Below are positions 9,766-18,833 of a stretch of 64,000 bases of DNA, one piece after another. The notes under the pieces are model-generated. The model was not told the origin of the DNA. It ran no database searches and saw nothing but the letters and a program-made list of their open reading frames with translations. The position numbers were made by a program, and so were the translations under genes. The stretch covers positions 186,001-250,000 of the forward strand of contig JAIVFI010000018.1 in assembly GCA_025558095.1 (NCBI GenBank), read 5' to 3'. Source of the stretch: Hyaloraphidium curvatum SAG 235-1 (taxonomy: Eukaryota; Fungi; Monoblepharomycota). Every line of letters starts with the position of its first letter. Position 1 is the first letter of the stretch.

Positions 9766-11783
9766 TCACTTGACAAACTCCCACCCCTCGCACTCCTCGC
9801 ACCCCTTCTCCACCTCGCACTCGGGCAGCGCCCCCTGCCACCGCAGCATGACGTCGTTGATGAGGTAGGTCATCCTGTGCTTCTGGATCGACACGTAGGC
9901 GTCGGCGTCCACGCGGCCCGAGGGGCGGCGCGAGGCGGCGGCTTGGCGGGCGAGCGCGGCGGCGCGGTGCTCCCGCATCGACTTCTGCTTGCGCGCGGGG
10001 GTGCGGAGCGGCACGGGGGCTGCGAATGCGGCCGGGGTGGGTTCCGGCTCCGGCTCCGCGGGCTCGGTGTCGTTGCACCGCGGCCACGGCCACCACCACC
10101 TCCTCCCGCAATCCGGCTCCGGCTCCTCCGGCTCCGGCTCGGGCGTCGGTTCCGGCGTCGGTTCGGGCGGCGCGGTCCCGTTGCCGTGCTCGGTGCAGTT
10201 GGGCCGGGGGAAGGGCCACCACCACTTTCGCCCGCAGTCCGGATCGTCCGGGTCCTCCGGGTCCTCGGGGTCGGGAGAGGGAGAGGGGGCGGGGGTGCCG
10301 TCCCCCGGCTGCCCTCCGGGCCCGCCGCTGCCGTCCCCATCGGGCGGTGTCCCCGGCGGCGGCGCTTCGGGGTCGCCGATGCGGTCCAGGTCGAAAGCGC
10401 AGGTGCGCCCGAGGTGGCACTTGCTCTCGAGCGCGTAGCCGGAGATGTAGCACGACGAGGTGATGCCGTTGCAGGTGCCGAGGAAGATGGGGTCGCCCGT
10501 GTTGCCCCAGTGGTATACGCGGCTGTGCTCCATCTCCTTTTCGAACTCCTTGGTGCCGGGTTCGGGGACGATCCCCAGCCGCGCGGCGAACAGCGCGTCG
10601 CCGGGGGCTTCGAACGCGAACGCGGGCAGGCCGAGTGTCTGCGCCGTGATCCCCGCCAGCGCGCCGCCGAGCGAGTGGCCGACGAGCCACACGGACGCGC
10701 GGGGGTGCAGGTGCTGCAGGTAGCGCACGATCTCCTCCGCCATGCGGTAGTACGAATCCTGCCAGTCCACGCACACCTCGCGGAGGCACTTGCGCGAGCA
10801 GGTGTAGTGGCCCTCGTAGCAGTCGCAGCCGGGGAGGGTGTACCAGGAGCCCTCGAGCTTGCCGCAGCAGCACGAGAACATCATGTTGTCCTGGACGGGG
10901 GAAGGAGCGTCAGTTTTCTGGACAGGCACACGGCGTGCAAGGAATCTCCCGCGGCGCGAAAACGGCCGCCGCGCCGGTACTCCCAGGCGGCCGTCGATAG
11001 CCGCGATTCCACCCCCGGCAGACACCCACGTTGTACTTGTCCCTCCCGCTCGTCGGCCCGCCCACGCCGAACGCCCCCGGGCTGGTCCCCTTGATCGACA
11101 CCACGACGACCTCGTCGTCCTGCTCGGCGTGGCCGCGCTCGTCCGGGAACGAGGCGAAGACGTAGCCGCGGATGCCGTCCTCGGACCAGCCGAAGCCGGT
11201 CGAGAGGTTCCAGCCGGGGACCTGGTGGAACGACGGCGAGGGCGGGAGGGAGTAGGCGTCGTAGGCCATGTAGGCGAGGGTGAGCACGGTTTTCTGGGGA
11301 CGCAACAAACGAATGAGGATTGGACGGGGAGGGTGGCGGCAGGCCACCCACCAAGTCTTTGGGGTCCGGCACCATCATCTCCCGCCCGGCCTCCTGCGCC
11401 CTGAAGGCCGGCCCGCTGGGCACCCACTCCCTGGCGGCCTGGGCCTCGAGCACGCGGCCGTCCATGTGCACCCGCCCCTCGGGCACGTCCAGGGCGCCGA
11501 ACACGCCGCCGGGCGCGCGGTGCAGCACCTTGCTGAGGCGGAAGCCGAGGCGGGAGGGCGCGGTGCCTTTGGCGCCGGCGGGGGCGCCGAGCGGGATCTG
11601 GTGCGCGGCGGCGGCGGGGTCACGTGCGCCGGCGAGCAGCGCCAGCGCGGCCACGGCGGCCAGCGCGCGGGCGACATTGCTGAGAGGGGATCGCGCGGGG
11701 GAGCGGGCGCGGGGCGCGGGGGCCGCGGGGCGGCGCGGGGGGCCGGCCGGCGCCGGGCGCGGCCCGGTCGGGGTTTGGCCCAT
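9766..11783 (-). CDS. ATG15: Autophagy lipase Atg15 (lipase class 3), multi-exon
   Basis: N-terminal TM; LAYMAYDAY, GFGWSEDGIRGYVF, VVSIKGTS, DKYN|DNMMFSCCC, GHSLGG, DPIFLGTCNG...YALESKCHLG. Confidence 0.9.
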
Positions 11784-16091: not shown

Positions 16092-17523
16092 ATGGTCGGC
16101 GGCGGTCCCGGACGGGCCAAGAAGGAGGCCTACACCGAGAAGTTCAAGGAGCTGCTTGAGGAGTACCCGACCATCTTCATTGTCAATGTGGACAACGTCG
16201 GGTCGACCCAGATGCACCAGATCCGCAAGTCGCTCCGCGGGGAGGCCGTCATCCTGATGGGCAAGAACACGATGATGCGGAGGGTGCTGCGGAGCCTGAA
16301 GGAGGTCAACCCGGCGTACGACAAGCTGGTCGGCGTGGTGAAGGGCAACATCGGCCTCGTTTTCACGAAGGGGGAGCTGAAGGACATCCGCGGGAAGATC
16401 CTCGAGAACCGGGTGGGTATTGGCACGGAATGCGGTCGGTGTGGCGGCGGATGTCTGGAGGACGGGGATGGGAGGTTGCGGCGGGCTCGGCACCTCGGCC
16501 TGTGCGCGTCGAGTACCGAACGACGCCGTCGCCCGCCGCCTTCGTGGCCTGCGGTCGACCTGGGCTCTTTTTGGAAGGACTAGGCCCGGCGCCTTCCTCG
16601 TGGTGGTGGACGGGAGGCCATGCTGCGGCGGCTCACCTCGCGCGAACGGTTCCTTACCGTCCGCCCACTCTCCAGGTGCAAGCGCCTGCCAAGGCCGGTG
16701 CCATCGCCCCCGTCGATGTCATCATCCCCGCCGGCAACACCGGCATGGAACCCGGCAAGACCTCCTTCTTCCAGGCCCTCGGCATCCCCACCAAGATTGC
16801 CCGCGGTACCATTGAAATCGTCAACGACGTGTCCATCATCAAGACCGGCAACAAGGTCGGCGCTTCCGAGGCCACCCTCCTCAACATGCTCAACATCTCG
16901 CCGTTCACGTACGGCCTGAGCATCGTCAACGTGTTCGACGACGGAGCCGTCTTCCGGCCCGAGCTCATCGACATCAACCTGGAGGACCTCGTGGAGAAGT
17001 TCCTGGACGGCGTCAAGGAGATCACGCAGCTGTCGCTGGCCCTGCACTACCCGACGGTCGCGTCGGTGCCGCACCTGACCCGGCGCGGTTTCATGAACCT
17101 CGTCCACCTTTCGATCGCCTCGGGTTACACCATCAAGGCAACCGAGGAGCTCGCGGTGGGCATTTTCGCGGTGGATTGTGCTGCGAACGGTCCTGATCGC
17201 GTGTTTGCCCTCCACAGAACGCCATCTACACCCAGACCCTCCTCAACGGCTTCCGCAACCTCGTCGCCATCGCCCTTGAAACGGGCTACTCCTTCCCCCT
17301 CGCCGACCAGGTTCGTTGTTTCGCTTGCCCAGGCACCGTATCGCCGCTCAACGGCTCCATCCAGATCAAGGATGCCCTCGCCAAGGGCCCCGCCGTCTCT
17401 GCCGCCCCGGCTGCTGCTGCCGCCCCCGCCGCCGCCGCGTCGTCGGCCAAGGAGGCCGCGCCTGCCAAGGAGGAGGCTGAGGACGAGGAGGACGAGGACA
17501 TGGGCATGGGTCTGTTCGATTAG
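16092..17523 (+). CDS. RPP0: 60S acidic ribosomal protein P0 (uL10); exons 16092-16412, 16676-17155, 17218-17310, 17365-17523
   Basis: VDNVGSTQMHQIRKSLRG...MGKNTMMRR, IPAGNTGMEPGKTSFFQALGIPTKIARGTIEI, C-terminus EDEDMGMGLFD; all introns are GT-AG, phase 0. Confidence 0.97.
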
Positions 17524-17675: not shown

Positions 17676-18833
17676 TTAGGATTTCAAATCCGTCCCGTTC
17701 TGGTTCCCATTCGGGGTCTCTATCCATCCATCCGCCTCGGCATCCACCGCTTTCGTCGCCACCTCTGCCAGGCGTTCCATCTCCTCCGCATCCAGGGCAT
17801 ACTCCAACAGCACCGCCTCGTAGTCGGCTTGCCCGAAAGCCGCGAACTTCTCCGGGTCCCCGAAGATCGGTAGCCCGGATATTTCGGCCACCGCCACTGC
17901 GATCGACATGCCCTCGCCGGCCGAGGACAATGTGGCCTGGTGCTTCCGCGGGACCACGAGGATCGCGGGGAACGGGTGCGGGAGGAAGATCACGTTGTGC
18001 GCGCGGTTCGCGGCGACGAGGTGGGACAAAAGAGCGCCGGCCGCGCGGGCGAGAGGCACAAGTGCGGAGCGGGGCGGCCGCGGCGTGTGGAGGGTGAACG
18101 CAAATGCTGGGAGGGGCCAGCCGCTCGTCAGCTCGAGCGTGAGCTCGTTCTGGCCCACGCGGTGAGAGTGCAGCGAGGTCCGTGAGACGACCTCGATTGG
18201 GTAGCGGCCGTCCAGATGCGGGAAGAGGTCGCCGAGGTAGGTCAGGTGCGTGTGGAGGTGGTTCACGGACGCGTACGCGCCAAGGCTGTTGAAGAGGAGC
18301 CGCGCGTCCGGCCGCGTGCAGAGGGTGCAGACGACCTCGAGCGGGAGAAGGACCTGTTTCCAGTCGCGCAGGTTCTGCGGCAGGCCGGCGCGCGGCCGCG
18401 GGACGAGCAGCGAGTGGAACGGCACCACGGGGCTCGCGTTTATAAGGATCATGTGCGGGTCGCCCTCGCCATCCGGCAGCTGCGGCGGCGCCGACCCGGG
18501 TGGGCCGGCAAAGACGGCGTCGATCGCGTCGCCGACCCAGCAAATGGTCTCCTCGGGCTTTGTTTTGCCAAAGTGGAACTTCTCCGGCGCGAAAGGCGCG
18601 TCCACCGCGATCGACCGCGCGGCGGCGGCATCGGCGGCCACGGAGCTTTGACGCTTCGCGGCAAAATGGCCCGGGATGAGCTGCTTGACCGCGCCGCGGC
18701 CGCCGTCGAGTGGCGCGCGCGTCGCGCCGTCGTACGAGTTCGTGAAGAGGTGGGCCCTCGCCTCCCAGCCGGCTTGCACGCGCGTGTCAAAGTCGGCAGC
18801 AGCGCCGTCGGGAGCCGCGCCCTCGGCCGCCAT
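17676..18833 (-). CDS. GDP-D-glucose phosphorylase (GDPGP1/VTC2 HIT-like family)
   Basis: PFAPEKFHFGK, LINASPV...HSLLVP, FNSLGAYASVNHLHTH; intronless. Confidence 0.88.
   Translation of the reverse strand: MAAEGAAPDGAAADFDTRVQAGWEARAHLFTNSYDGATRAPLDGGRGAVKQLIPGHFAAKRQSSVAADAAAARSIAVDAPFAPEKFHFGKTKPEETICWVGDAIDAVFAGPPGSAPPQLPDGEGDPHMILINASPVVPFHSLLVPRPRAGLPQNLRDWKQVLLPLEVVCTLCTRPDARLLFNSLGAYASVNHLHTHLTYLGDLFPHLDGRYPIEVVSRTSLHSHRVGQNELTLELTSGWPLPAFAFTLHTPRPPRSALVPLARAAGALLSHLVAANRAHNVIFLPHPFPAILVVPRKHQATLSSAGEGMSIAVAVAEISGLPIFGDPEKFAAFGQADYEAVLLEYALDAEEMERLAEVATKAVDAEADGWIETPNGNQNGTDLKS

What the first reader, a model, noticed from the sequence alone, without database searches (positions are those of the whole stretch)
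16960..17364. Ribosomal P0 with a third P1/P2-binding spine helix on a symmetric 93-nt exon: heptameric or splice-switchable stalk
Seen: after the uL10 core there are three homologous segments: LVEKFLDGVKEITQLSLALHYPT, VPHLTRRGFMNLVHLSIASGYTI and YTQTLLNGFRNLVAIALETGYSF. The third is encoded entirely by exon 17218-17310 (31 codons), flanked by two phase-0 introns. Skipping it keeps the frame and gives a normal two-site P0 (...TEELA-IKDALAKG). Known: eukaryotic P0 has two such sites (pentameric P0-(P1/P2)2), while many archaea have three (heptamer). Inference: this eukaryote may build a heptameric stalk, or may tune stalk stoichiometry by exon skipping.
Basis: partly seen in the sequence, partly recalled or inferred. 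Interest (0 to 1): 0.88.

Follow-up and report, generated by a model that had tools for sequence, protein, structure and literature searches.

The report
Fungal ribosomal P0 with third stalk-site
This early-branching fungus, like several unrelated fungi and protists found here, has a ribosomal stalk anchor protein (P0) with three docking helices instead of the two described for eukaryotes, so its ribosomes probably carry seven factor-catching arms rather than five, and the evidence is against this being switched by splicing.

Summary
The third spine helix is real. The gene has four exons (16092-16412, 16676-17155, 17218-17310, 17365-17523). The public gene model at this locus is 350 aa, which requires exon 3. 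Exon 3 encodes a helix-II-type unit with all four residues mapped for P1-P2 binding in silkworm P0. The middle unit is the divergent one. Two close relatives and Gonapodya share the I-II-II layout, under purifying selection where tested.

The splice switch is not supported. One relative has all three helices in one exon, Gonapodya cannot skip the helix in frame, and no skip product was found. The symmetric exon is best explained as a by-product of duplicating a segment containing an old intron.

New here: three-unit P0s also occur in Synchytrium, Cladochytriales, Hortaea/Meristemomyces and two protist-like sequences, as I-I-II. A single fungal origin is rejected. All keep one canonical 26-aa YPT-linked pair and add the extra unit through a longer 29-37-aa spacer, unlike archaea (26+26). 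This fits the P2/P1:P1/P2 packing rule.

Binding of a third dimer is inferred, not shown. I found no paper reporting a three-site eukaryotic P0.

The parts
16092..16412 (+). Exon 1 of RPLP0/uL10 (107 codons), rRNA-binding domain
   Evidence: Pfam Ribosomal_L10 E=3e-22; the start matches the public gene model
16413..16675 (+). Intron 1, 263 nt, phase 0; same position in Gonapodya
16676..17155 (+). Exon 2 (160 codons): domain II insert, spine unit 1, YPT loop, spine unit 2 and part of the spacer
   Evidence: Pfam RL10P_insert E=4e-26; aligns to yeast and human P0 through helix II
16988..17056 (+). Spine unit 1 (helix-I type) ending in the YPT loop; binding positions F,G,I,L
17066..17134 (+). Spine unit 2 (helix-II type, divergent: T,G,L,L at binding positions, RR before the Gly), 26 aa after unit 1; segment 85-94% identical in relatives
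17156..17217 (+). Intron 2, 62 nt, phase 0, two codons downstream of the ancestral post-helix-II intron position; absent in relative L002
17218..17310 (+). Exon 3 (31 codons): spine unit 3 (17227-17295, helix-II type, binding positions L,G,L,I), 33 aa after unit 2
   Evidence: included in the 350-aa public model
17311..17364 (+). Intron 3, 54 nt, phase 0, at the widespread fungal position 20 codons after the helix-II Gly; in frame and stop-free
17365..17523 (+). Exon 4: cap helix, Ala-rich hinge, acidic tail ending in GLFD, stop
   Evidence: Pfam Ribosomal_60s E=4e-11; end matches the public model

Best explanation
This is the ordinary cytosolic P0 (uL10) of a Monoblepharomycota fungus in which a 33-codon segment carrying spine helix II was tandemly duplicated, probably once in an ancestor shared with Gonapodya (inferred). 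The protein is made constitutively with three spine helices; this is shown for relatives and matches the public model here. Each helix most likely clamps one P1-P2 heterodimer, giving P0-(P1-P2)3 with seven acidic tails instead of five (inferred). Units 1 and 2 keep the canonical 26-aa YPT-linked geometry in which two P1 subunits face each other. Unit 3 hangs on a longer 33-aa spacer, predicted partly helical, which would let a third dimer bind without forcing a charged P2 face against its neighbour (inferred from the human model). The expected effect is a larger local pool of eEF1A/eEF2 at the GTPase centre. The symmetric exon arose because the duplicated segment contained an old phase-0 intron; relatives lost one or both copies.
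For: Repeat significance. Unit 3 has all four binding positions mapped by mutagenesis in silkworm P0 (PMC3616719). The public model at this locus is 350 aa = 107+160+31+52. A full-length intron-less 1157-nt contig of a relative (87% identical over exon 2), read as an mRNA, has all three units. A genomic relative with shared neighbouring genes has them in one exon. Uncorrected pN/pS is 0.14-0.26 for segment 2 and 0.29-0.69 for exon 3, against 0.41-0.49 for the canonical unit 1. AlphaFold2 of the relative gives helices 209-229, 239-256, 264-288 and a cap 294-304. Seventeen 90%-identity clusters have three units, all with one 26-aa pair plus a 29-37-aa spacer, whereas 358 of 359 two-unit I-II proteins are spaced 26. 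One clade of fungal three-unit P0s is rejected, p-AU 8e-7. The archaeal spines measured are 26+26. P2/P1:P1/P2 topology from PMC3326305.
Against: No binding, mass or structure of a complex was obtained, and the fold tool is monomer-only. Spine pLDDT is only 54-79 over residues 231-300. Unit 2 has Thr at a position that is hydrophobic in all 264 distinct canonical helix-II sequences and Arg where 98% are hydrophobic, and its score (26) is below the 5th percentile (41). The human model holds other dimer arrangements to be unfavourable. No RNA data for the window's organism were reachable, and its P1/P2 genes were not examined.
Confidence: 0.72

Rival explanations
1. Three helices, two dimers: one unit (most likely the Thr/Arg-bearing middle one) is a structural spacer or is sterically blocked, so the stalk stays pentameric but is longer or differently oriented.
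For: Unit 2 departs from canonical helix II at G-3 (T), G-2 (R), G+2 (M) and G+6 (H). Middle units in other three-unit lineages also score low, 13-33. Heterodimer asymmetry disfavours P2-facing neighbours (PMC3326305).
Against: Unit 2 keeps Gly0 and hydrophobic +1, +4, +5, +7 and +9, has Val at G-3 in relative L002, and follows an intact YPT loop at the exact 26-aa spacing. In Gonapodya all three units have hydrophobic G-3 and G+4. Repeated independent retention of a whole binding unit is hard to explain as a spacer.
Confidence: 0.16
2. Splice-switchable stalk: the organism makes both three-site and two-site P0 by skipping exon 3 (or by a cryptic donor that removes unit 2) and so tunes stalk stoichiometry.
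For: Exon 3 is symmetric and holds one whole unit. A GT at 17057, if spliced to 17218, would remove unit 2 in frame and restore exactly the 26-aa spacing.
Against: The exon structure is not conserved: none in L002, not skippable in frame in Gonapodya, single exon in the other lineages. The cryptic GTs at 17057 and 17066 are Val codons lacking the +5 G present in all 12 mapped donors of the window gene, L002 and Gonapodya. The flanking introns are 54-62 nt, typical of intron definition, and skipping is 3% of fungal events. No skip product was seen in the protein searches.
Confidence: 0.06
3. The third site binds something other than a standard P1-P2 heterodimer, for example a lineage-specific P-protein paralog or homodimer, giving a mixed heptamer.
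For: Segment 2 is both unusual and more conserved (85-94%) than units 1 and 3 (56-74%) among relatives, as if fitted to a specific partner. Yeasts use site-specific P1/P2 paralogs (PMC3616719 lists four; site specificity is from my own knowledge).
Against: P1/P2 repertoires were not examined. The human P2 homodimer does not bind P0. A middle helix flanked on both sides would be more constrained anyway.
Confidence: 0.06

Closest known systems
Eukaryotic P-stalk anchor uL10/P0, pentamer P0-(P1-P2)2 (human, yeast, silkworm; PMC3326305, PMC3616719)
   Same: L10 domain, domain II insert, helix I-YPT-helix II at 26 aa, Ala hinge, acidic GLFD tail.
   Different: One extra helix-II-type unit on a 33-aa spacer. 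Every eukaryotic P0 sequence in the PDB matched only part of the three-helix profile.
Archaeal heptameric stalk aP0-(aP1-aP1)3 (Pyrococcus horikoshii, PDB 3A1Y; PMC7768734)
   Same: Three tandem spine helices and a predicted seven C-terminal tails.
   Different: Archaeal units are evenly spaced 26+26 (Methanobacteriaceae) and bind symmetric homodimers. Here spacing is 26+33, the units are eukaryotic I/II types, and the core is nested among two-site fungal P0s, so this is a secondary duplication and not an archaeal relic.
Variable bacterial L10-(L12)4/6/8 stalk (two, three or four dimers; PMC6562825)
   Same: Stalk copy number is set by the number of repeated binding segments on the anchor and differs between lineages.
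   Different: bL12 is not homologous to P1/P2. Such variation was not described for eukaryotic cytosolic ribosomes in the papers I could search.

Membership tests
Eukaryotic uL10/P0 | N-terminal L10 domain plus RL10P insert | tested here: met
   Pfam, exon by exon
Eukaryotic uL10/P0 | Ala hinge and acidic C-terminal GLFD tail (distinguishes P0 from Mrt4) | tested here: met
   Exon 4, PF00428; Mrt4 only E=4e-4
Eukaryotic uL10/P0 | Helix I and II joined by a YPT loop at 26-residue spacing | tested here: met
Canonical pentameric eukaryotic stalk anchor | Exactly two spine helices | tested here: not met
   Three significant units; three spine helices predicted in the relative
Heptameric (three-dimer) stalk anchor | Three helices each with hydrophobic/Gly residues at -5, -2, +2, +5 | tested here: inconclusive
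   Units 1 and 3 meet all four; unit 2 meets three, with Thr at -5 (Val in L002)
Heptameric (three-dimer) stalk anchor | Binds three stalk dimers | not testable with these tools
   Needs native MS, reconstitution or multimer modelling
Archaeal aP0 | Even 26+26 spacing and archaeal sequence affinity | tested here: not met
   26+33 here against 26+26; a close relative is 27-29% identical to the archaeal proteins; fungal placement
Regulated cassette exon | Symmetric phase, frame kept on skipping | tested here: met
Regulated cassette exon | Skippable exon structure conserved in relatives | tested here: not met
Regulated cassette exon | Skip-junction transcripts in this organism | not testable with these tools
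   No reads reachable; indirect negative only

The most novel reading that the evidence does not exclude
Besides being heptamer-capable, this one species has kept both introns so that it can skip exon 3 and switch its ribosomes between five- and seven-arm stalks, a splicing-controlled form of ribosome heterogeneity.
Probability: 0.06. Interest if true: 0.85.

Novelty: new variant of a known kind. Interest (0 to 1): 0.63.

Why it matters
Papers read here give the eukaryotic stalk as P0-(P1-P2)2 with no exception (PMC3326305, PMC3616719, PMC7768734, PMC6562825), and the P2/P1:P1/P2 model explains why two dimers pack as a closed pair. Natural three-site P0s that arose at least three times in fungi, always keeping the 26-aa pair and adding the third unit on a longer spacer, would show that eukaryotic stalk number can evolve and how the packing rule is bypassed. 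Tail number is reported to correlate with GTPase activity, elongation rate and fidelity (PMC7768734). The gain-of-copy side of that question becomes directly testable, for example in culturable Hortaea werneckii or by moving a three-site P0 into budding yeast. Annotation can hide such cases, as one Cladochytrium model shows.

Tried and rejected
Annotation or assembly artefact: rejected. The same layout occurs in three independent assemblies of relatives, with synonymous divergence.

Retained archaeal state: rejected on spacing, unit type and tree.

Mutually exclusive use of units 2 and 3: unit 2 shares an exon with unit 1, and the two in-frame cryptic GTs lack +5 G.

Four-unit hits (P0001 Aedes, P0143 Albula) repeat the whole domain II and are read as model or assembly duplications.

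The metagenome scan for more close relatives returned only distant P0s: 17 of 19 loci scored as two-unit and two gave no scoring unit. The first attempt with an alignment failed.

The genome scan gave only four archaeal loci, used for spacing.

The careful tree did not finish, so quick trees were used. A single origin of the chytrid-grade three-unit proteins is not rejected by the core alone (p-AU 0.44); their separation rests on which helix is duplicated.

Five literature searches on stalk stoichiometry, including one on Hortaea, found no three-site eukaryotic P0. Three look-ups for two further papers, one recalled from memory and one cited in papers read, failed.

Searches were exon by exon by reference, or used tool-returned proteins of relatives.

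Full report
Source and gene. A single-exon neighbouring protein identified the window as part of NCBI assembly GCA_025558095.1, contig JAIVFI010000018.1; the fetched locus is identical to the window. From memory this accession is Hyaloraphidium curvatum, which no tool confirmed. The tree places the gene with Gonapodya (SH-aLRT 95, quick tree), that is in Monoblepharomycota. The gene has four exons, 16092-16412, 16676-17155, 17218-17310 and 17365-17523, with three phase-0 GT-AG introns. The public gene call over exactly 16092-17523 has 350 residues, equal to 107+160+31+52, so it includes exon 3; its evidence basis is not shown. Pfam finds L10 in exon 1, the P0 insert in exon 2 and the acidic tail in exon 4. 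All searches used single exons by reference (one search used an open frame restricted to the exon-2 residues) or proteins of relatives returned by the tools.

The observation. I built separate profiles of helix I and helix II from 185 two-site, mostly fungal P0s. The window has one helix-I unit (score 48) and two helix-II units (26 and 32). Shuffles never reached these scores. Mutagenesis of silkworm P0 defined four dimer-binding positions per helix (PMC3616719), which are G-3, G, G+4 and G+7 in my numbering. Unit 1 has F,G,I,L, unit 3 has L,G,L,I and unit 2 has T,G,L,L. The exon-3 unit is therefore the more canonical helix II, and the middle unit is the odd one. It has Thr and Arg where canonical helix II is 98-100% hydrophobic.

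Relatives. P0002 comes from a 1157-nt Logan contig with short UTR-like ends and no introns, read as an mRNA, and has all three units. P0003 comes from a 4080-nt genomic contig whose upstream genes match window 9769-11293. It has the whole spine in one exon, and its only evident intron is in the last codons. Gonapodya sp. JEL0774 also has I-II-II, spaced 26+37. It has a phase-0 intron after the first helix II and the next intron in phase 1 in the hinge, so its third unit cannot be skipped in frame. Between the window and the two close relatives, segment 2 is 85-94% identical (uncorrected pN/pS 0.14-0.26) and exon 3 is 71-74% identical (0.29-0.69, only 23 synonymous sites). The undisputed unit 1 is 56-68% identical (0.41-0.49). 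The extra material is thus about as constrained as a known binding helix, or more. AlphaFold2 on P0002 gives three spine helices and a cap helix. The spacer before unit 3 is mostly a helical extension, at modest confidence as expected without partners. L001 shows that a three-unit message is expressed in a relative; it does not show splicing in the window's organism.

The splice switch. The symmetric exon is real but is not a conserved feature. An intron 20 codons after the helix-II Gly is old in fungi. It is mapped in Synchytrium and Gonapodya. Also, 15 of 17 tail-less two-unit hits have Val at the next position and most turn into unrelated sequence there, as expected from reading into a GT. 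Duplicating a stretch that spans this intron gives two same-phase introns and a symmetric exon between them. On this reading Gonapodya kept the first copy and L002 neither. The window kept the second at the old position and the first two codons off, by a shift or a new gain; this history is inference. A cryptic GT at 17057 would remove unit 2 and restore 26-aa spacing, but it is the conserved Val codon and lacks the +5 G of all 12 mapped donors in this clade. No two-unit protein with the middle-unit signature appeared in any search, which is a weak negative. Exon skipping is 3% of fungal alternative splicing (PMC3925392). I put regulated skipping at about 6%.

Wider pattern. Searches with exon 2 and with three-unit profiles gave 17 clusters at 90% identity with three units. 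Monoblepharomycota are I-II-II (26+33, 26+37). Synchytrium microbalum, S. endobioticum and environmental kin are I-I-II (33+26). Cladochytrium replicatum, Nowakowskiella and kin are I-I-II (30+26). Hortaea werneckii, Meristemomyces frigidus and an unnamed relative seen in three transcript-like contigs are I-I-II (30+26). Two unnamed long-branch, protist-like proteins are 30+26 and 29+26, one seen in four samples. Of 359 two-unit I-II proteins, 358 are spaced 26. The searches were enriched for three-unit proteins, so these counts are not frequencies. Monophyly of the fungal three-unit set is rejected (p-AU 8e-7). That of the chytrid-grade subset is not (0.44), but those differ in which helix is doubled. 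So there are at least three origins in fungi. Archaeal spines are 26+26 in three Methanobacteriaceae proteins, with only one interval scored in the fourth.

Mechanism. In the human model two heterodimers sit as P2/P1:P1/P2, with the P1 faces burying the Tyr-Pro loop, and arrangements that bury P2's charged helix 3 are unfavourable (PMC3326305). That makes a closed pair. Every three-unit eukaryotic P0 found keeps one 26-aa pair with this loop and adds the extra unit 3-11 residues further away than the canonical spacing. The simplest reading is that the third dimer binds at a distance that avoids the P2 clash, giving a 2+1 heptamer unlike the evenly packed archaeal one. Shown: the sequence layout, its conservation, and the lack of a skippable exon in relatives. 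Inferred: dimer binding, topology and any effect on translation. Tail number is reported to correlate with GTPase activity, elongation rate and fidelity (PMC7768734). Why these lineages gained a site is unknown, and neutral fixation followed by entrenchment is not excluded.

Novelty. All papers read describe the eukaryotic stalk as pentameric, and the searches found no report of a third site. The library lacks most subscription papers, so prior notice cannot be excluded. This is a new variant of a known machine. The single gene is of moderate interest, and the repeated origin with a shared spacing rule raises it. Confidence in a constitutive three-dimer anchor is about 0.72; interest 0.63.

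Noticed in passing
L007:1837-1908 (Cladochytrium replicatum second P0 gene, model P0146): The public model removes the extra helix by calling a 72-nt in-frame intron with a poor donor (GTCCAG) and an AAG acceptor. The stretch encodes the same peptide as the other paralog with only synonymous changes, so it is probably an annotation error that hides a three-site P0. An exitron is not excluded.
   Followed up: partly
window 17311-17364: Intron 3 is 54 nt, in frame and stop-free, so retention would insert 18 residues between unit 3 and the cap helix. Its GC3 (0.67) is below that of the exons, so it is probably not coding.
   Followed up: partly
Middle units of the three-unit P0s: The middle unit often has Lys/Arg at the one or two positions before the central Gly in separate lineages (this clade, Synchytrium, Hortaea group, one protist-like protein), which may reflect a shared exposed or acidic-partner-facing surface.
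   Followed up: no
P0053, P0144, P0105, P0147: In Synchytrium and Cladochytriales three-unit P0s the short cap helix after helix II appears shortened or lost, and in Synchytrium the loop after the first unit has lost the YPT motif while the second loop keeps IPT.
   Followed up: no
L002:2646-3790: This relative lacks all three introns of the window gene, including intron 1 that Gonapodya shares, and has one near the last codons. Read-through of that intron explains the 439-aa call P0003.
   Followed up: partly
window 9769-11293 (-) versus L002:208-2074: A lipase-3 gene and a second gene upstream of P0 in L002 match window genes about 5 kb upstream but on the opposite strand relative to P0, so the neighbourhood is kept with an inversion.
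   Followed up: partly
window 17676-18833 (-): Single-exon 385-aa gene with GDPGP1 (GDP-D-glucose phosphorylase) Pfam hits, convergent with P0 and ending about 150 nt from its stop.
   Followed up: no
L003:1501-3042 (Gonapodya model P0045): The first 81 residues of the public P0 model are a Pro/Gln/Tyr-rich stretch that looks like a separate upstream gene fused to P0 by the annotation.
   Followed up: no
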